A DNA stretch of 64,000 nucleotides from Vicugna vicugna (Eukaryota): contig MU059126.1 in the NCBI GenBank assembly GCA_013265495.1, positions 9,662,349 through 9,726,348 of the forward strand. Reading direction: 5' to 3'. Made by a program: the position numbers and the translations under genes. Positions 260-37,584 of the stretch are shown piece by piece (position 1 is the first letter of the stretch; every line of letters begins with the position of its first letter). The notes under the pieces were generated by a model, which saw only the letters and a list, made by a program, of their open reading frames with translations, had not been told where the DNA came from and searched no databases.

Positions 260-470
260 TGTGCTAAACACTTTATAAATACTGATATACATACACATCT
301 TAACCTCTTTAATCTTCACCATAACCCCATCAGATAGGTAATTTTATTATCTCTGCTGTACAGAAGAGAAAACTGAGGTACAGAGAGGTTAAAGTATGTA
401 CCTAAAGTCACAAAGCTAAATAAATGGTAGAACCAGAATTTGGACCAAGGCAGACTAACTTGAAACCTGT
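260..470 (-). mobile_element. MIR SINE
   Basis: MIR core in reverse (aaaactgaggtacagagaggttaa...gtcacaaagcta...gaaccagaatttg). Confidence 0.8.
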
Positions 471-508
471 GCTTTATCCATTTCACCCACTGCCCCTTTA
501 ACGTAGAC

Positions 509-719
509 CAGTAGCTCCCATCTGTGACTGATTTTACTACCCCAAGGAACATTTGGCGATGTCTGAAAGTACCTTGGATGGAACGGTTTGGGAAGAGCAG
601 GGTACTGCTGGCGTTGAATAGAGGCCAGGGCTGCTGCTGAACATCCACACAGGACAGTCCTCACAGCAAAGAATGATCCTGCCCCAGAGCATCAATAATG
701 CGGAGCTTGAGAAACCTGA
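509..719 (+). mobile_element. MER20 (hAT-Charlie)
   Basis: acatttggcgatgtctg...gaggccagggctgctgctgaacatcc...ttgagaaacctg follows MER20 along its length. Confidence 0.85.
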
Positions 720-7100: not shown

Positions 7101-8539
7101 GGATGGGCGACAGTGGATTCAAGGGGTTTTTGACTCAAAAAAGTCCTAGACAAGAGCGTATCCAGTCAGCTCTCACGGATGCCTGTGCAAGTTATCTTCA
7201 GGAATGCTTTGACCCCAGGCGTGTCTCTTTGTGCGGCGCAAAGTACAGGTTGCCTTTCCTCCAGCCACTCAGGGAATGCTCGTTCATTTAACAATAAATT
7301 ACAGGAAACATATTTAGAAAGAGAAATATGCTAGGGCAAGACATCACATCATTTATCCTCAGGACTTGGAGCAATGCTTTTTGGATTTTTCACATGGCTG
7401 CTCCTGTCAATTCTAAATGGATTTATCATCTCCTCTTCTGCACAAATATTAAAACACTACAATTCTTTTCCAACTGACACTGTTTGCTTAGCTTTAGGTT
7501 TTATGAACAAAACATTCTTCCCTTCCCGTGGACTCTTTCCTGTGCTTTATGACCAGGAAAACCACACAACTTAAGTACTTTGGGGTTGGGTGGCTTCTTC
7601 CTGCATCTCAGCCCCTTATGTCTTGAGAACATGATGCCCCAGGTCACCTCCCACGTTTACAAGACATGTTCTTTGTTTGACCAGAACACATCCTTTGTCC
7701 CTTTGTCCTGTGCTCACCTAAAGAATGCTTCAAGTTCAAGGTGTTGACATAGAGTCAGGCAACTGTTAGAGCTGAGAGTGGGAAGGATTCTGGTAACTTT
7801 ACAAACATACTGTGTAGTCCCCATCCCCTTCATTCCTACCCTGTTTCCCTCCCCACCATTCCCCAAATCTAACCTGGTTTGGACTGGTTTCATGGCCATC
7901 TTTGGCTTTCAGGCCACAGAACCTGGTAATTGGTCCTGAGACCATTCCAGGAGTACAGTCATTATGTTGTGATAGCCAAACTCTTGCAAAGGTTGCAAAA
8001 TCTGATGCAAGTTGTTCCTGAATTTCCAGTGCTCAGAGAAAAAAAAAAAAAAACCTCGCCTTTTGTCTCTGTAAGCTGTTTACTTAGGGCTTGGACTGGG
8101 CTCCCCACCTTCCTTCCATACACAGAAATGATGACTTCCAGCCAGTTGGCATTTGCTGTTCTAATTTGCCTGTGAGCACGTCTTTCTCTTCTTTAACTCT
8201 CTGTGAATGTCAAGAATCTTTGCTGGGAACTCAGAAAGAAGTTGAGAATTTTGGGAAGCCTCTGGCAGAAGAGACTATAAAGTTAGTCCCTGCCAAAGGT
8301 TGGCCTGCCCCAGCAGGTTCAGACGATGTGAGAACCACGTCTAGAGTGAGAATCGGCTGTCCTGTCTCTCTTCTCTTAGAGCCTTGGCTCTCCCGTCAGT
8401 GTTATTAGGAGGGAGCAAAGACTTGCATTTTTCACTTGCAGTGTTTGTGGCTTTGCCGTTGGCCATATGATCTTGGTTAAATTCAGGGATACAAAGTGAT
8501 TTCCAAAGCAGTTAGGGTCATATTGATTCTGAAGAAGTC

Positions 8540-8900
8540 ACTGGGGATGTGTGTCAAGGTTAAACCAAAGATGTTCATGATGGTGGTGTTTATAATAGCC
8601 AAAAAAAAGAAAAAAGAAGAAGAAGGAGGAGAAGGAGGAGGAGGAAAAAGAAAAGAGAAAGGGATAAAAGGAACAACCTACATGTCCAGTAATAGAGAAC
8701 TGACTGATATTAATGATATGCAGTCCTGAAAAAAAAATGATGGTTTGGAAAGTTAAATGATGGCATGACATGATTTTTCCTCTGCTGCATGTACTGGCAC
8801 ACAGGAAGGAAACTAGTAATGTTAGATAAATGAATTAATAAATGTATGGGAGTTACTTTTAATGTGTAAAAGCAAGTGATATGTAATTGTGATCTCACTT
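8540..8900 (+). mobile_element. Old L1ME 3' fragment interrupted by a GA-rich tract
   Basis: aagatgttcatgatggtggtgtttataatagcc...aacaacctacatgtccagtaatag. Confidence 0.6.
8601..8663 (+). repeat. Pure purine (GA-rich) low-complexity tract
   Basis: aaaaaaaagaaaaaagaagaagaaggaggagaaggaggaggaggaaaaagaaaagagaaaggg. Confidence 0.9.
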
Positions 8901-8929
8901 TTATTTTGAAAATATAAATAAATACAGGA

Positions 8930-9135
8930 CAGAATTTCTTAAGCTTGGCCCAGCGGACATTTGGGGCCAGATAGTTTTTTTGGACAGCTCTAAGCTGTAT
9001 GTTGTAGGATGTTTAGCAACATCCCTGACTTATTCAGGGTATTAGCACCCCCTCCAGTTGTGATGACAAAATGTGTCTCCAGACACAGACACATGTCCCC
9101 TGGAAGGCACAATTGCCCCCTGATGAGAACCACTC
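8930..9135 (-). mobile_element. MER20
   Basis: Reverse MER20: gacatttggggccagatag...atgtttagcaacatccctg...aaaatgtgtctccagaca...tgagaaccact. Confidence 0.85.
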
Positions 9136-9149
9136 CTATAGCATGTAAT

Positions 9150-9400
9150 GATAACATGTGAGAACTATTACGAAGGAGAAGAACTTTATGAGAATGTGTT
9201 GAAGCACATCCCGTATGGCCTGTGGGGTCAGGGAAGGCCTTCTTGGGGAAGTGATACTTGAGCTGCGGGCTGACGGTGAGCAGGAGGTACCCACCCAACG
9301 GGCAGGGAGACACCGGGGAGAGCAGCCCATAGATCAGAGACCACGGCTGGAGCGCTGCAAGTCATTTTGGCTCCATTTTGAGAGCGTTGGCAGGCCAGAA
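9150..9400 (-). mobile_element. L2 fragment
   Basis: gtcagggaaggccttcttggggaagtgatacttgagctg. Confidence 0.6.
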
Positions 9401-9499
9401 TCTCAAACTGTCACCCTGGTGCTCCTCCAAAGAAGAATCTCAAGAGTTACGACCTCTTCACTGTGAATAGAGCTTTAAATATTTAGAGGTTCAGCAGAT

Positions 9500-9700
9500 G
9501 GCATTTGGAATCAAAGAGCCCTGTATTTGAATCCTGACTTCTCCGCTTACTAGTTGCATAACTTACGCAAGCTATTGAACCTCTCTGAGTCTCAGCTTCC
9601 CCATCTTTAAAATAGATGTAATAATTCCAACCTCACGGGGTTTCTGTGAAGATGAATTGTATAAAGCCCTTTGCACAGGACCCAACATGTGCTGTATGTT
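9500..9700 (+). mobile_element. MIR
   Basis: tttgaatcctgacttctccgcttactagttg...ctcagcttccccatctttaaaatag. Confidence 0.85.
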
Positions 9701-9779
9701 GCACACATCATGGCTACTAATGATAACGCTTGCCTTTGGAGCATTCGTGAAGTACCATGCATCGTATTTAGAACTTGAT

Positions 9780-10365
9780 ACATACTGTTTCATTTAATCT
9801 TCATGACATTCTTTTAATCTTATCCATTATTTTAATCTTGATTTACACGAGGAAACAGAGATTTAGAGGAGTTAGGTAGCGTGTTCTAATGTGTCGCACA
9901 TCATACAGCTAAAGTAAATGTGGAGCCAGCATTTTGATCAGAGGGGTTTTAGGGGCTTTTTGTTTGTTTAATACATATTTTTATTGAAGTATAGTCAGTT
10001 TACAATGTTGTGTCAATTTCTGATGTACAGCACAGTACTTCAGTAATATAGGAACGTACATATATTCATTTTCATATTCTTTTTCACTTTAAGTTACTAT
10101 AAGATATTGAATATACTTCCTGTGCTATATACAGTCTAAACTTGTTGTTTATCGGATTTTTGTGAGAATTCTCTTGTATTTCGAAATGAGAGACAATCTG
10201 CCAGAGTTTGGTAGGTGTTCTGTACGATTCAGTGGGTTTCTAGATGTGATTCTTGATGTATTTGTGGGAGAGAGTGAGCTGTGAGTCTCTCTACTCTGCC
10301 ATCTTGGCTCAACCCCCTAATCAGAGATGTTTGAAGAACACCTCTTCAACACCAAACCACACTGA
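9780..10365 (-). mobile_element. MIR split by the L1-derived insertion at 9950-10317
   Basis: gaggaaacagagatttagagg...ggagccagcattttgatcagag on the left; MIR-like sequence resumes at tcagagatgtttgaag...accacactg on the right. Confidence 0.6.
9950..10317 (-). mobile_element. L1-derived mini-element: L1 5'UTR start fused to L1 3' end (candidate spliced L1 retrocopy)
   Basis: Sense strand starts GGGGGTTGAGCCAAGATGGCAGAGTAG (L1 5' end with YY1 CAAGATGGC). After 165 nt it joins ATAAACAACAAG...CAATAAAAA plus an A-rich tail. Imperfect TSD atcagagNNgttt at 9937-9949 and 10320-10332. Confidence 0.85.
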
Positions 10366-10366
10366 C

Positions 10367-10955
10367 TTACTGAGTAATCAGTCTCCACAAATTTAGCAGT
10401 TAAAAACAACATAAGTTTATTATGTCCCAGTTTCTGTAGGTGGGATGTCTGGGCACAGCCTGGCTAGATTCTCTGCTCAGGGTCTCACCAGGTTGAAATC
10501 GAGACATCAGTCAAGACTGCAGTTCTCATCTGGGGCTTTGGTTCCTCTCCAGAGCACACCAGTTACTGGCAGGATTCATTCCCACTTGGTTGTAGGACTG
10601 ACGCCCCCACTTTTCGGCTAGCTGTCAGCCAGGGGCCACTCTAGCCCACAGTCTTTGCCACATGGCCTCCTTGGGCTTTTCACAAACATGGACATTTGCT
10701 TTCCTTCAGGTCAGCAGAAACCTGGCTCTCTGACTTTCATCTCTGCCACTGTCTGTCTTCAAGGGACTTGTGTGACTAGGTCAGGTCTGGTTGAATCAAC
10801 ACACTATCTCAAAGCCAACTGATTTGAGACCTTAATTGTGTCTGTGAAGTTCTTTCACAGTGGTGTCTAGTATAGTGGTTGACTGAATGAGTGGGAGAAA
10901 GTGTGTGTCCACCAGGAGAGTCTTGTGGGTCATCTCAGAGTTCTTGCTACCACCA
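10367..10955 (-). mobile_element. MLT1D/E/F-type LTR
   Basis: ccacaaatttagcagttaaaaacaacataagtttattatgtcccagtttctgtagg...ggtcatctcagagttcttgctacca. Confidence 0.8.
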
Positions 10956-12559
10956 CAACTTATTTCTGTTTTTGAATAGTGGCTGCTGAGGCTGTCAGAG
11001 AACGTTGTCTGCTCACACTGTGTTTCCAGATCTAACACAGCTCTTTGCAATGACATCTCCCTTAACAACCCTCCTTCCTCACCAGCTCAGTGCCCCATGG
11101 AGGTGTACAGGAGTTTACCCCAGGGTTCCTGGTGGTGGTGTTCTGTGCTGCACCTCCGTTATTGCCTCCACCAAGACTGTGAATTTCCCTCTGGTTCTTT
11201 CCTCCTCTGTCCTCTGTTTGTAGAGCCAGGTAATTCCCACTGTGACGAGGGAAAGTCTGTGCTCTTGGAAAAGGAAGAGGGATACCATTGCCAAATGTAA
11301 CTAGGACTGATTCCAGTTCAACTGGCCAGTGCCATTTTGTGGAATCCAAGACTTTTTTCTGACTTCTCGGCCGTGGCTTCTCCTCCCCACCTCTTCTCCT
11401 CCCTCCTCTGTTCTCTGGTTTCCCCTGAAAATTCCTGTGCTCTTACAAGCATGCCAAGAAAACTGCACTCAAACCATCTGGACAAGTAATCCCAGCGTGA
11501 AAATTATCTTGGTACTTGGACTTCCCAAACTAAAAGGGTTTGGGTTTGAGTCATTCACAGAGACCCACCCTAAAACAGCCTCATTCTTCTTAAGGAAAGG
11601 AAATGACACCTTAATAAAAAGGCAGCGTCCAGACTATAAAATTTCACCTTGCCATGGATTTCTTCACATCTGATCTCCATGAAAAATTTCACTGATTTTT
11701 CAAAAGCAACAAGGGAAGAGTGTAAAAGACAGGGTGGGGAGAATTAGCTGTTCCAAACATGTATTTTAGTTTGAAAATTTAAAGGGAAAAGTCCTTCAGA
11801 AATCATTAGTCAAATAAAGTCATATTTTTATTCCCACTAGACTACTTGGCACCTGTTTGTTTATTTGGTTCTTGATAATTTTAATACTGGTGTTAGTGCC
11901 AAGAATAGTATAAAGTGACCGTTTGCTAGAAGTGTGTTAGTCGGCCATCCTGATAGAAAACGGAAGCCAAGACCATTTTTAAAGGAGTGTATCTTCTGCG
12001 ATTCTATTTTTGAGATGAAAGATCAAAGGAACAGCAGCTGTATTCTTGAGAAGAAAATGTGACAAGTAATATGCCCTCCTCTGCTGAGACTCAAGATGAG
12101 CTCAAAAGACCTTGGGCTCTTAACCGAGTTCAGATTCTGTAACTGAACTCACCAAAAGCAGCTCTCCCCAGTTCCCACTGAGGAGAGGGAGAGAGGCTGG
12201 TGAGAGCCAAAGTGGAGAGGCTGGGGTACGAATATCCCAGCTCTCCTCAGTCATTGGTCGAGGGCTGCTCTCCGGGGCATTCACTGTCTGCGACACCCAT
12301 CTGCCTGCCTCACGGGCAAAGAGGACTCAGGCAGCCAGAAAAAGCCTTCAGGCAAAGAAATGCAGGCTCTGGCTCTGGCAAATCAGACCAATGTGTTCTG
12401 AGGTGCAAAGGACAAGTTGATGTGAGCATCTGATATGCCAGGAGATTTAGTGTGATGCTCCATTTCTCCTGGGGATCACTGTAGCAAATTCTGCCGTGAC
12501 ATCCTCTTAGAGCTTTTGGGGGAAAAATTGCAAATACAGATAGAAAAAACATATATCTT

Positions 12560-12873
12560 CAAATGAACTTATTTACAAAACAGAAACAGACTCACAGACA
12601 AAAAAACAAATTTATGGTGACCAAAGCGGAAGTGGGGAGGGATAAATTAGGAGCATGGGATTAGCAGATGTGCACTACTATGTATAAAATAGATAAACAA
12701 CAGGGATGTACTCTATGGCACAGGGAACTATATTCGATATCCTGTAATAAACTATAATGGAAAAGAATTGGAAAACAAGAGTAGAGATACATACACGTGT
12801 AAGTAAAACAATCACTTTGCTATATACCTGAAACTAACACAATACTGTAAATCAATTATACTCAGTTTAAAAA
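12560..12873 (+). mobile_element. L1 3' end (cetartiodactyl type), 5'-truncated
   Basis: caaatgaacttatttacaaaacagaaacagactcacagac...aaaatagataaacaac...cctgaaactaacacaatactgtaaatcaattatactc; TSD-like atatatctt (12551-12559) and atgtatctt (12874-12882). Confidence 0.9.
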
Positions 12874-25240: not shown

Positions 25241-27297
25241 TAAAAATGGTTCGGGTCTCCATAAGCAAGTCCAACTACTATTGGGCTCTCTTATGTCTCT
25301 TCCTGTCAAAACCTGCTCACTTGGAATCTCCAGTTTCCTTTTATTTAGCTGTTACTTTACAAAGAAATCAGATGTACAGTAACCTCTAATCATGTGGTTG
25401 GAAGCTTCTTCTTGCAGCCAGAGACCTGCATTCTAATCCAAGTTTTGCCACTCACGGGCTTAGTGATTCAGGCCCGATTGGTTTAACCACCCTGTGGTGA
25501 AGTTTCCCTGGCTATCACATACCCAAGTGTGGCCATCAGTTGTCTCCAAGATCCCTTCCAGCCCAAAGGCCTCTGTCTGTATGATACCACTGGGGATATT
25601 CACATTTTAGCACAAACTTCCTGAAATGACAATGAACTGATGCAGTGAATAAACCACCAACAGTGGAAATGTAATAGAAGATACTTGGACCAGAGAGAGC
25701 TGGAATCTCTTTCCAAGCCTCCTAAATGTGATTTCACGTGGGCAGTTTCACCTAATCATGGTATTTTGGATTTGTCATTCAAGTCAGTCAAAAGTGTGGC
25801 TTGGTCAGCCTTTGTCAACAGAATGGCAGAAAACAAACCTGGGTGACCAGATATCTGGCTTTCCATTTCTCCTGCCAATGACTTTTGTCTTCTTTTGGGG
25901 TGATCTGGCCAGTCCCACCATGGCCTCCCATCAGGGCCATCATGGTGGCCTTCACAAAGCTTTAACTTCCAAGGTATCCCTAATTTCCAGGTCTCCACCA
26001 AACCTTTCCTGTCCTATTTCCCATCACTTCCAAGTTCTGTGCTCTGCTGAGTGACACATTACATTCAATAAATGAATGTGACTTTCTATGAAGTGCGGAA
26101 AAGTCATCTTTCAAAACAACATATTCATGCTTCTCATGGATCTTGTGAAGAAGATGCCCAAACACAAGAGAGTGGGTCTCATGAGGGAATCTGAGGACCT
26201 ATGATGGGTGAAGATGGATGGAGTTGGTTTAGAAGGCAGACCTTGTGACCTTCACATTCATCATTTTATATACCCCTTCTTCCCAACAGTATTGGGGGCC
26301 TATAAAAGTATGTATGCCTGTGAAAGAAATGAGAAAAACTAAATTTAAAGGGGAAAATGTATAGATCAAGCCCCTAGGCTAATACATATACACTGTGAGT
26401 ACAAAAATTCACCCTGAACTTCTCGACTGCCAAAGCAGAAGCACTTTCAGCCACCAGTTAAAAGGAAAACAAAACAAAAAAAAAAGCTAGATCCTTTTTA
26501 TAAATGAGCAGAGAAATTCATAGGAGGTACATTGAAAATGGTGTAAGGAACAATGGCAAAGACTGAAACATGGATGGAGGTTTATTCTTCATATCAACTT
26601 TGTTGGGGTCTTTGAGAAAAGACAACCTGGCAGGGGAGAGGGCTCCCTAGTTTTCTCACGTGTAGCCCTGTCTGCACAGCACAAAGGGAAGTGGAGTGTT
26701 ATTAAGCTATCACAGGCCAACAAAGCTGTTAAATTTGGTCTCCTGCCTGATTTGAAGAATGGAGACCAAGTCTTACAATTTCTCCATCCTAAATGCTCTC
26801 AAACCAATAGCCTCCTGCTTTCCATCATCAGCCTCAGCCTCATGACAGACCACCATCACCTCTCCCTGGGCCTCACTTGTCTCTCCGTTGCCAGCCCTCC
26901 AGTCCTTTCTGTGCACAGACATGAACTTTCTTTCTTTCTTTTTTTTTTTAGTTGAAGTACCATCAGTTACAATGTGTCAATTTCTGGAGTACATCACCAT
27001 GTCCCAGTCATGCATATACATACATATATTCGTTTTCATATTTTTTTCATTAAAGGTTATTACAAGATATTGAACATAGTTCCCTGTGCTATTCAGCAGA
27101 AAGTTTTTTTAGTCTGTTTTTATATATAGTAGCTAACATTTGTAAATCTCAAACTCCCAAATTTATCCCTTCCCACTACCTTTCCCCAGTAACAATAAGA
27201 TTGTTTGCTAAGTCTGCGAGTCTGTTTCTGTTTTGTAGATGAGTTCATAGTATCCTTTTTTTTCTTTTTTCTTTTTAGATTCTTTTTTGGTGATATC

Positions 27298-27464
27298 NNN
27301 NNNNNNNNNNNNNNNNNNNNNNNNNNNNNNNNNNNNNNNNNNNNNNNNNNNNNNNNNNNNNNNNNNNNNNNNNNNNNNNNNNNNNNNNNNNNNNNNNNNN
27401 NNNNNNNNNNNNNNNNNNNNNNNNNNNNNNNNNNNNNNNNNNNNNNNNNNNNNNNNNNNNNNNN
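27298..27464. other. Assembly gap (167 N)
   Basis: Run of N inside L1. Confidence 1.
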
Positions 27465-27550
27465 TTAGCTTGTTTCCATGTCTTGGCTATTGTAAATAGT
27501 GCTGCTGTGAACATTGGGTTGCACGTGTCCTTTCGAATTAGAGTTCCCTC

Positions 27551-27721
27551 NNNNNNNNNNNNNNNNNNNNNNNNNNNNNNNNNNNNNNNNNNNNNNNNNN
27601 NNNNNNNNNNNNNNNNNNNNNNNNNNNNNNNNNNNNNNNNNNNNNNNNNNNNNNNNNNNNNNNNNNNNNNNNNNNNNNNNNNNNNNNNNNNNNNNNNNNN
27701 NNNNNNNNNNNNNNNNNNNNN
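27551..27721. other. Assembly gap (171 N)
   Basis: Run of N inside L1. Confidence 1.
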
Positions 27722-29029
27722 TGAATGATGGCCATTCTCACTGGTGTGAGGTAATACCTCATTGTAGTTTTGATTTGCATTTCTCTGATAATCAGTGATA
27801 CTGAGCATTTTTTCATGTGCCTCTCGGCCATTTGCATGTCTTTATTGGAGAATTGCTTATTTAGGTCTTCTGCCCATTTTTGGATTGGGTTGTATAGTTT
27901 TTTTGTTAAGTTGTATGAGTTGTTTATATATTCTGGAAATTAAGTCTTTGTCAGTTGCATCGTTTGCAAATATTTTCTCTCATACCATAGCTTGTCATTT
28001 TGTTTTGCTTATGGTTTTTTTGTGTTTTGTTTTTTGGGTTTTGGGGGGGTTTTTTTGCTGTGCAAAAGCTGGTAAGTTTAATTGGGTCCCCTTTTTTATT
28101 TTTGCTCTTATTTCTATTGTCTGGGTAGACTGCCCTAGAAGAACATTGCTAAGATTTATGTGAATGTTTTGCCTATGTTTTCTTGTAGGAGATTTATCAT
28201 GTCTTGTCTTATATTTAAGTCTTTAAGCCATTTTGAGTTTATTTTTGTGTATGGAGTGAGGGGCTGTTCTAACTTCTACATGCTGCTATCCAGTTTTCCG
28301 AACACCACTTGCTGAAGAGACTGTCTTTACTCCATTGTATATTTTTGCCTCCCTTGTTGAAGATTAATTGACCATAGGTCTGTGGGTTTATTTCTGGGCT
28401 CTCTATTCTGTTCCATTGATCTATATGTCTTTTTTTATGCCAGTGCCACACTGTTCTGATTACTGTAGCTCTGTAGGATTGTGTGAAGTCTGGGAGGGTT
28501 AGTCCTCCAGCTTCATTCTTCTTCTTCAATATTGCTTTAGCAATTCTGGGTCTTTTATGATTCCACATAAGAGATGTGAACATTCTAAGAAGTGAACCTG
28601 ATGGGGCTATTGAGGGCTTTCTCACTGCCTCCAGGACACAGAGGTCTTGGCCTGGCACCACCCCCTCCCTGCCTCCAGCCCTTCATGATGTGGCCCCGTC
28701 CACCCTGCTGGACTCAGCTTCCATCCCTCTCCTATCCCATGCCTCCATGTCTCTCTCATCTGAAGCATCTCCGGCTCTTCCAGATGCCCCACAACCTGTG
28801 CCTGCCTATTCCTCCTCACCTTTCCAGTCTCAGCTTAGACATCCCATTTTGACCACATTCTTCCCTGGCCTCTCCAGCCAGCCCTGTCTCTATCTCCCAT
28901 CTCATCACTTCTCAAACCATGTTAGAACCACCTATCTGCTCACCTACCTGCTCCACTAGGCTCTAAGCTCCGTTTCTTAAGAGCTCAGCCTCCTGAGCCA
29001 TCCCTGCCGCTTCCCTTTCCAGCCACTTG

Positions 29030-37137: not shown

Positions 37138-37584
37138 TGGATAGACCTAAAGATTATCATATTAAATGAAGTAAGTAGGACAGAGAAAGACAAATATCAT
37201 GATATCATGATATCACTTATATGTGGAATCTTAAAAAAAAAAAGGCGAATTCTATTTACAAACCAAAAACAGGTTCACGGACATAAACTCTGGTTACCAA
37301 AGGGGAAAGGGCGAGCAGAGGGATAAATTAGGGGTTGGAGATTAACAGACACGTGTTACTATATATAAAATAGATAAACAACAAGAACCTGTTGTTTAGC
37401 ACGGGGACCTGCTGTGTAGCACAGTATACCTACTATATATTCAATTTCTTGTAATAACATAACGGGAAAGAATCTGAAAAGAAAAAATATAAATGTATGT
37501 ATACGTATAACTGAATCACTTTGCTGGACACCTGAAACTAATGTTATAAATCAACTACACTTCAATGAAAAATCTTTTCAAAAA
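37138..37584 (+). mobile_element. L1 3' end, 5'-truncated, with TSD
   Basis: tggatagacctaaagattatcatattaaatgaagtaag...aaaatagataaacaacaag...caactacacttcaatg; TSD agaaaggNNcaagac at 37123-37137 and 37585-37599. Confidence 0.92.

What the first reader, a model, noticed from the sequence alone, without database searches (positions are those of the whole stretch)
9937..10332. Candidate spliced L1 retrocopy: L1 5' end fused to L1 3' end, both ORFs removed
Seen in sequence: on the - strand the element begins with an L1 5' terminus (GGGGGTTGAGCCAAGATGGCAGAGTAG...TCCCACAAATACATC). After 165 nt it reads ...CACAAAAATCCG|ATAAACAACAAG (junction 10153/10152) and continues through the L1 3' end, AATAAA and an A-rich tail. 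It is flanked by an imperfect 13-bp TSD inside a MIR. Two other L1 3'UTR copies in this window read AAAATAG|ATAAACAAC at the homologous spot (AG at 12691-12692 and 37372-37373), so the join falls exactly after an AG. Established knowledge: spliced integrated retrotransposed elements (SpIREs) have been described for primate L1s, and ordinary L1 copies lose the 5' end rather than the middle. Inference: my unverified recollection of the bovine L1 5'UTR at this position is ...CAAAACTCG|GTAGGA, a donor-like site. The element would then be a retrotransposed RNA with an intron of several kb removed. If many copies share this junction, it is a non-autonomous, SINE-like L1 derivative family in camelids.
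Basis: partly seen in the sequence, partly recalled or inferred. Interest (0 to 1): 0.75.

Follow-up and report, generated by a model that had tools for sequence, protein, structure and literature searches.

The report
ORF-less spliced L1 retrocopy (mini-L1)
A 368-base LINE-1 copy in a camelid genome keeps only the first 165 bases and the last ~200 bases of the element, joined where splice-site-like sequences lie, so it is most likely a retrotransposed spliced L1 RNA; unchecked notes report four more of the same build in this genome.

Summary
On the minus strand, 10317-10153 is a 165-nt L1 5' terminus. It is joined at 10153|10152 to the last 173 nt of an L1 3'UTR, then AATAAA, a decayed A-rich tail and a 15-nt target-site duplication (12/15) inside a MIR.

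The 3' breakpoint lies exactly after the AG of TATAAAATAG|ATAAAC in two other L1 3' ends of this window. The 5' breakpoint lies, within 1 nt, where four ruminant-type L1 5'UTRs in alignment A3 (five of six fetched) read G|GTAGGG and one pig-like copy reads A|GTACAA. Under a rough random-breakpoint model such a GT/AG coincidence has about 0.2% chance.

So a spliced L1 RNA copied in trans (a SpIRE lacking both ORFs) is the best reading, at about 0.65. It is not proven:
- No camelid full-length L1 5'UTR could be obtained.

The scan found this build before on other DNA of this genome. Four more unchecked first-reader notes describe 328-365-nt mini-L1s, which hints at a recurrent class or a family. 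Whether copies come from repeated splicing or from self-transcribed mini-L1 masters is open. Verdict: new variant of a known kind, moderate interest.

The parts
10318..10332 (-). 5' copy of the target-site duplication (AAACATCTCTGATTA). It is preceded by TTCTTC, so the bottom strand reads GTTT/GAAG, a T-rich L1-endonuclease-like nick site.
   Evidence: 12/15 identical to the 3' copy; both copies align to one site of a MIR paralogue
10153..10317 (-). L1 5' terminus, 165 nt ('exon 1'). It starts with GGGGG and carries the conserved CAAGATGGC box (10306-10298), which is YY1-site-like by my recollection of the motif.
   Evidence: about 70% identity over up to 131 nt to the 5' termini in L001-L006; the pattern is unique in the window
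10152..10153 (-). Junction ...AAAAATCCG|ATAAACAACAAG. One G is ambiguous between the two sides.
9980..10152 (-). Last 173 nt of an L1 3'UTR ('exon 2'), ending in AATAAA (9985-9980).
   Evidence: alignment A1 with the L1 3' ends at 37.3 kb, 12.6 kb and 27 kb
9950..9979 (-). Degenerate A-rich tail (AATATGTATTAAACAAACAAAAAGCCCCTA).
9935..9949 (-). 3' copy of the target-site duplication (AAACCCCTCTGATCA).
37364..37383 (+). Comparison site: an ordinary L1 3'UTR reading TATAAAATAG|ATAAACAACA. A TTAAC branch-point-like motif lies about 28 nt upstream of the AG.
12683..12702 (+). Comparison site: a second ordinary L1 3'UTR with the same AG|ATAAAC.
9830..9934 (.). Host MIR, downstream part. The upstream part lies at about 10333-10400.
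   Evidence: right flank matches window 447-344 at 65%. Calling it MIR also rests on my recollection of the MIR consensus.

Best explanation
The element is a retrotransposed copy of a spliced L1 transcript, a SpIRE-type element that lost both ORFs.

Proposed steps:
1. A full-length camelid L1 was transcribed from its own 5' terminus.
2. The spliceosome joined a donor about 165 nt into the 5'UTR (G|GTAGGG in related artiodactyl L1s) to a weak acceptor about 175 nt before the polyadenylation signal (AAAATAG|ATAAAC). This removed the rest of the 5'UTR, ORF1, ORF2 and most of the 3'UTR.
3. The roughly 340-nt polyadenylated RNA encodes nothing. It was therefore copied into a T-rich nick in a MIR by L1 ORF2p supplied in trans (target-primed reverse transcription). 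That left a tail and a 15-nt duplication.

Shown: the anatomy, the duplication, the exact AG, and the GT in relatives.
Inferred: the GT in the camelid parent, the splicing itself, and mobilisation in trans.

The copy is probably one of a recurrent class in this genome. I leave open, at about even odds, whether copies arise by repeated splicing of L1 RNA or from transcribed mini-L1 source copies.
For: - The element starts at the L1 5' terminus and ends with the L1 3' end, AATAAA, a tail and a duplication. The whole piece therefore went in as one RNA.
- The join falls exactly after AG in two independent L1 3' ends of the same genome.
- That AG is the first one lying more than 10 nt downstream of a TTAAC branch-point-like motif in the 37.3-kb copy.
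- Homology of the 5' part to ruminant-type and pig-like L1 5'UTRs stops within 1 nt of a conserved GT.
- That GT is among the 1-5 best donor-like sites of the first 700 nt in the five ruminant-type copies.
- The rough chance of such a GT/AG coincidence for random breakpoints is about 0.24%.
- Four more unchecked notes report 328-365-nt 'mini-L1' elements with duplications in about 29 Mb of this genome. Random deletions would not recur at one size.
- 14 runs listed as DNA or of unstated kind, from 6 studies and two organisms, hold 87-89% of the words of 9700-10600. The arrangement is therefore not an artefact of one assembly.
- Precedent: spliced L1 RNAs are retrotransposed in humans (PMC5860796).
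Against: - No camelid full-length L1 5'UTR was seen, so the donor is inferred from relatives that are only about 70% identical.
- Near the junction the alignment is loose. MAFFT places the one-base length difference at the join, so the fit is within 1 nt, not exact.
- In the one pig-like copy the homologous GT scores badly (-1.9 bits, rank 20 of 24).
- The acceptor has a poor polypyrimidine tract: about half purines, with AAAA right before TAG.
- There is no RNA evidence.
- The other copies are unchecked AI notes and their junctions are unknown.
- Known human SpIREs keep ORF2 and most keep ORF1. An RNA without ORFs loses cis preference, so it should be mobilised inefficiently.
Confidence: 0.65

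Rival explanations
1. It is a member of a self-propagating non-autonomous family. One founding event, by splicing or deletion, made a mini-L1. That mini-L1 kept the L1 core promoter (first 165 nt, with the CAAGATGGC box) and the L1 3' end with its poly(A) signal. Its transcripts were then amplified in trans by L1 proteins, as RIME is by ingi in trypanosomes. This rival differs from the best explanation in how copies multiply, not necessarily in how the first one arose.
For: - Five notes of the same build and similar size in about 29 Mb would extrapolate to a few hundred copies. That is more than all known human SpIREs (131, PMC5860796).
- The retained 5' end carries the box conserved at L1 5' termini. 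[quoted passage not shown]
- The weak acceptor argues against frequent re-splicing.
Against: - No second copy could be read, so no shared diagnostic mutations or family tree are known.
- Promoter activity of 165 nt is untested. Human SpIREs that lost 5'UTR sequence have reduced promoter activity and are called evolutionary dead ends (PMC5860796).
- The copy-number estimate rests on unchecked notes.
Confidence: 0.25
2. Template switch or internal skipping by the reverse transcriptase during a single insertion. cDNA synthesis copied about 200 nt of the L1 3' end, then jumped to about 165 nt from the 5' end of the same or another L1 RNA.
For: - There is one base (G) of microhomology at the join, and an AAAAT stretch near it on both sides.
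- One duplication and one tail fit a single event.
Against: - Both breakpoints would have to fall by chance at AG and, within 1 nt, at a good GT. The rough chance is about 0.2%.
- It does not explain four more elements of nearly the same size.
Confidence: 0.07
3. Genomic deletion after insertion. A full-length L1 went in here and later lost about 6 kb between the 5'UTR and the 3'UTR. Alternatively the join is an assembly error.
For: Large deletions inside old repeats do occur. Only this one locus was actually read.
Against: - The GT/AG coincidence argues against it, as for the template-switch rival.
- Recurrence at other loci is not explained.
- 14 runs of two organisms hold the stretch, which argues against an assembly error. 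It would also place any deletion before those organisms split.
Confidence: 0.03

Closest known systems
Human SpIREs (spliced integrated retrotransposed elements; Larson et al. 2018, PMC5860796)
   Same: Both are L1 copies that start at the L1 5' end and carry a duplication and a tail. Both lack an internal piece bounded by a GU donor in the 5'UTR and an AG acceptor. In both, the donor lies early in the 5'UTR: nt 97/98 in human, about nt 166 here.
   Different: Human SpIREs splice within the 5'UTR or into ORF1, and they stay about 5-6 kb long with ORF2. Here the acceptor lies in the 3'UTR, so both ORFs are gone and the product is SINE-sized. The host is a camelid, not a primate. Here the donor was seen only in related artiodactyl L1s.
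RIME/ingi and NARTc/L1Tc of trypanosomes (PMC1874656 and related papers)
   Same: Both are short non-autonomous elements made of the 5' and 3' ends of the autonomous LINE. Both keep the 5'-terminal internal promoter and depend on the LINE's proteins.
   Different: RIME is an established multi-copy family whose origin is not tied to splice sites. Here family status and promoter activity are untested, and the breakpoints look like splice sites.
Processed pseudogenes and spliced L1 RNAs such as SpORF2 (PMC2896524)
   Same: A spliced polyadenylated Pol II RNA is copied in trans by L1 ORF2p. L1 RNA is known to be spliced at cryptic sites in many tissues.
   Different: The source 'gene' here is L1 itself. 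SpORF2 keeps ORF2, whereas this RNA keeps no coding sequence.
HAL1 (half-L1) elements. This comparison is my recollection only and was not checked here.
   Same: Both are L1 derivatives lacking part of the coding capacity that are mobilised by full L1s.
   Different: HAL1 keeps ORF1. This element keeps none.

Membership tests
SpIRE (spliced integrated retrotransposed L1) | The deleted segment ends with AG (splice acceptor) in the unspliced parental L1. | tested here: met
   Two L1 3' ends of the same genome read TATAAAATAG|ATAAACAACA, and the join is exactly after that AG. A third copy reads AACAG|ACTAAA.
SpIRE (spliced integrated retrotransposed L1) | The deleted segment starts with GT (splice donor) in the unspliced parental L1. 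| tested here: inconclusive
   No camelid 5'UTR could be obtained. In relatives, four ruminant-type L1 5'UTRs in alignment A3 (five of six fetched) read G|GTAGGG and one pig-like copy reads A|GTACAA at the homologous spot, within 1 nt.
SpIRE (spliced integrated retrotransposed L1) | L1 insertion hallmarks: starts at the L1 5' terminus, has a poly(A) signal and tail, a target-site duplication and a T-rich nick site. | tested here: met
   15-nt duplication (12/15), AATAAA, a decayed A-rich tail, and GTTT/GAAG on the bottom strand.
SpIRE (spliced integrated retrotransposed L1) | The same junction occurs at several independent loci, or in L1 RNA. | not testable with these tools
No camelid genome could be searched. 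Only unchecked notes of four similar elements exist.
Non-autonomous LINE deletion-derivative family (RIME-like) | Consists of the 5' and 3' ends of the autonomous partner, without ORFs. | tested here: met
   The longest ORF overlapping the stretch is 47 aa, and it is not L1-like.
Non-autonomous LINE deletion-derivative family (RIME-like) | Many copies form their own lineage, with source copies transcribed from the retained promoter. | not tested
   No second copy could be read. The CAAGATGGC box is retained, but its activity is unknown.
Classical SINE (head derived from tRNA, 7SL or 5S) | A Pol III-type head derived from a small RNA. | tested here: not met
   No tRNA was found. There was no Rfam match near threshold; the only hit was a chance-level miRNA match at 20 bits against a gathering score of 95. 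The head is an L1 5' terminus.

The most novel reading that the evidence does not exclude
Camelids carry a SINE-sized, self-transcribed 'mini-L1' family of several hundred copies. It was born from a 5'UTR-to-3'UTR splice of L1 RNA. It is propagated in trans through its retained L1 core promoter and L1 3' end. That would make it a mammalian counterpart of trypanosome RIME, and a route by which splicing turns an autonomous LINE into its own parasite.
Probability: 0.25. Interest if true: 0.75.

Novelty: new variant of a known kind. Interest (0 to 1): 0.5.

Why it matters
Retrotransposed spliced L1 RNAs are documented in primates. There they keep ORF2 and are regarded as dead ends. A form that removes both ORFs and still recurs would show two things: L1 splicing also operates in artiodactyl-type L1s with a different 5'UTR, and ORF-less L1 RNA is a usable template in trans.

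If the copies have their own source genes, this would be a new type of mammalian non-autonomous retroposon. It would be one that repeat annotation hides as two unrelated L1 fragments. Such elements would also be clean markers for camelid phylogeny and for dating L1 5'UTR evolution.

If only a handful of copies exist, it is a tidy but ordinary extension of SpIRE biology.

Tried and rejected
   - One exception was not of my choosing. The last findings look-up widened my 9937-10332 by itself to 8437-11832.
2. A second L1 5'UTR in the window: none was found, even with sensitive settings and with ruminant 5'UTRs as queries.
3. The same 5'UTR pattern, and a gapped 5'UTR-to-3'UTR mini-L1 pattern, in genome contigs and viral contigs: 0 hits. 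These collections are not expected to hold camelid DNA, so the blanks mean little.
4. The protein route to a camelid full-length L1.
   - The L1 ORF2 piece at 28272-28568(-) found 3331 proteins. The 120 best listed come almost all from ENA metagenome contigs, and no listed hit exceeds 82% identity, so nothing looks camelid.
   - The three contigs fetched (L007-L009) match neither half of the element.
   - Their host is unknown and could be human, so I set them aside and did nothing more with them.
5. Look-ups of earlier findings by sequence and by relatives were blank.
6. Literature searches found no described mammalian family of this build: 'mini-L1', internally deleted L1, and the camel transposon survey PMC8605555. 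Belancio et al. 2006 on L1 splicing was not held.
7. A SINE head (tRNA or 7SL) was rejected.
8. I built no joined 'empty site' or spliced model. The flanks and the two halves were compared separately, by reference.

Full report
**What is there.** On the minus strand the sequence reads, from 10332 downwards, as follows:
- a 15-nt stretch AAACATCTCTGATTA;
- an L1 5' terminus beginning GGGGGTTGAGCCAAGATGGCAG at 10317;
- after exactly 165 nt, the join ...CACAAAAATCCG|ATAAACAACAAG at 10153|10152;
- 173 nt of L1 3' end up to AATAAA (9985-9980);
- a 30-nt decayed A-rich tail;
- AAACCCCTCTGATCA (9949-9935), which matches the first stretch at 12 of 15 positions.

Both copies of that stretch align to a single site of a MIR paralogue elsewhere in the window (530-330). 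It is therefore a real target-site duplication inside a MIR. The base before the 5' copy gives GTTT/GAAG on the bottom strand, a T-rich L1-endonuclease-like site. The whole 368-nt insert thus entered as one polyadenylated RNA by target-primed reverse transcription. No tRNA and no credible Rfam family lies in it. The longest ORF overlapping the stretch is 47 aa.

**Identity of the two halves.**
- The 3' half aligns with three ordinary L1 3' ends of the window at 69-77% identity.
- The 5' half has no relative in the window.
- One scan of metagenome contigs with a 22-base pattern from the 5' half returned six contigs, L001-L006.
- In those contigs a repeated element begins at the same point, with ...CAAGATGGC..., and is about 70% identical to the element over up to 131 nt (E down to 2e-11).
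- By my recollection five are ruminant L1 (L1-BT-like) 5'UTRs. One, L002, lies next to a pig PRE-1-type SINE. This host assignment is inference.

**The acceptor.** TATAAAATAGATAAACAACA occurs exactly at 12683-12702 and 37364-37383, with none expected by chance. The element's 3' half begins with the base right after that AG. In the 37.3-kb copy a TTAAC branch-point-like motif lies about 28 nt upstream. The junction AG is the first AG more than 10 nt downstream of that motif. The polypyrimidine tract is poor, so this is a weak acceptor.

**The donor.**
- After the shared CTGGCAG, the element runs 45 nt to the join.
- The ruminant-type copies run 46 nt to G|GTAGGG. One variant reads CAG|GTAGGG.
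- The pig-like copy runs 45 nt to A|GTACAA.
- Homology to the element stops there.
- Identity near the join is low, and MAFFT puts the one-base length difference at the join. The coincidence is therefore good to within 1 nt, not exact.
- With an approximate donor matrix written from memory, this GT scores 5.05 bits (8.99 in L006). It ranks 1st to 5th of the 19-26 GTs in the first 700 nt of the five ruminant-type copies. In the pig-like copy it scores -1.86 bits, rank 20 of 24.
- A rough random-breakpoint model takes the AG frequency of 5.6%, two possible placements of the join, at most five equally good GTs per 700 nt, and a 1-nt tolerance. It gives about 0.24% for the double coincidence.

**Recurrence.** The scan's own index holds four further first-reader notes in this genome, within about 448 windows. 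They are s1-253831, s1-223556, s1-234063 and s1-243785. Each describes a mini-L1 of 328-365 nt made of both L1 termini, several with duplications.
- These are unchecked AI notes. Their sequences could not be read, so shared junctions are not shown.
- If they hold, they extrapolate crudely to a few hundred copies per genome.
- Another note (s1-236604) places the genome in the llama/alpaca lineage.
- 14 runs listed as DNA or of unstated kind, from six studies and two coded organisms, hold 87-89% of the sampled words of 9700-10600. The arrangement is therefore not an artefact of one assembly, and it predates the split of those two organisms.

**Mechanism.** The best reading has three steps.
1. 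An L1 RNA was made from the element's own 5' end.
2. It was spliced from a donor about 165 nt into the 5'UTR to the weak 3'UTR acceptor.
3. It was copied in trans by ORF2p, whose key requirement is the poly(A) tail (PMC5860796, introduction).

Precedent exists. Human SpIREs use a donor at nt 97/98 and acceptors at 622, 790 or 976, and number 131 copies (PMC5860796). L1 RNA is widely spliced in tissues (PMC2896524). The present form differs because its acceptor lies in the 3'UTR, so both ORFs are lost.

The retained head keeps the CAAGATGGC box. A YY1 site is the only feature shared by all primate L1 5'UTR types (PMC3286893). Self-transcription of mini-L1 copies, as in RIME/ingi, is therefore possible but untested.

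**Limits.**
- No camelid full-length L1 5'UTR could be obtained.
I worked beside those places from then on, and widened its own range over them without my asking.
- The protein route led only to metagenome contigs of unknown, possibly human, host (L007-L009). I set these aside.

**Verdict.**
- Observation: confirmed.
- Splicing origin: likely (about 0.65), but proven only on the acceptor side.
- Family status: a lead, not a result.
- Novelty: a new variant of a known kind.
- Interest: 0.5.

Noticed in passing
window 26945-28570 (-), with N runs at 27298-27464 and 27551-27721: A 5'-truncated older L1 (ORF2 C-terminal part plus 3' end). Its 3' end is the closest in-window relative of the element's 3' half (77%). 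At the acceptor spot it reads AACAG|ACTAAA instead of ATAG|ATAAAC. The N stretches were left untouched.
   Followed up: partly
L005:1029-1181 (-): This ruminant-type L1 5'UTR carries a tandem duplication of about 45 nt. The GGAACAACTCCTACAGAACACCTACTGAA..CTGGCAGAAGA block occurs twice, just upstream of the donor-like GT. It is a small example of 5'UTR remodelling next to the splice site.
   Followed up: no
window 9700-10600: Two RNA-seq runs labelled reproductive-system (X15, X16) hold 36-38% of the sampled words of this stretch. Part of the region is therefore present in RNA contigs. Whether that part is the element or just intronic flank could not be seen.
   Followed up: no
L006:392-470 (+): One ruminant-type copy has CAG|GTAGGG instead of TGG|GTAGGG at the donor-like site. 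That raises the approximate donor score from 5.05 to 8.99 bits. Donor strength at this spot therefore varies between L1 copies.
   Followed up: no
window 330-530 (-): A MIR paralogue spans the site homologous to the insertion point. It is useful as an in-window stand-in for the uninterrupted target.
   Followed up: yes
L007, L008, L009: These are metagenome contigs with L1 ORF2 fragments 71-80% identical to the window's old L1 piece (80% for P0001, which fetched L007 and L008; 71% for P0087, which fetched L009). They lack the laurasiatherian-type L1 3' end. Their host is unknown and possibly human, so they were set aside.
   Followed up: no
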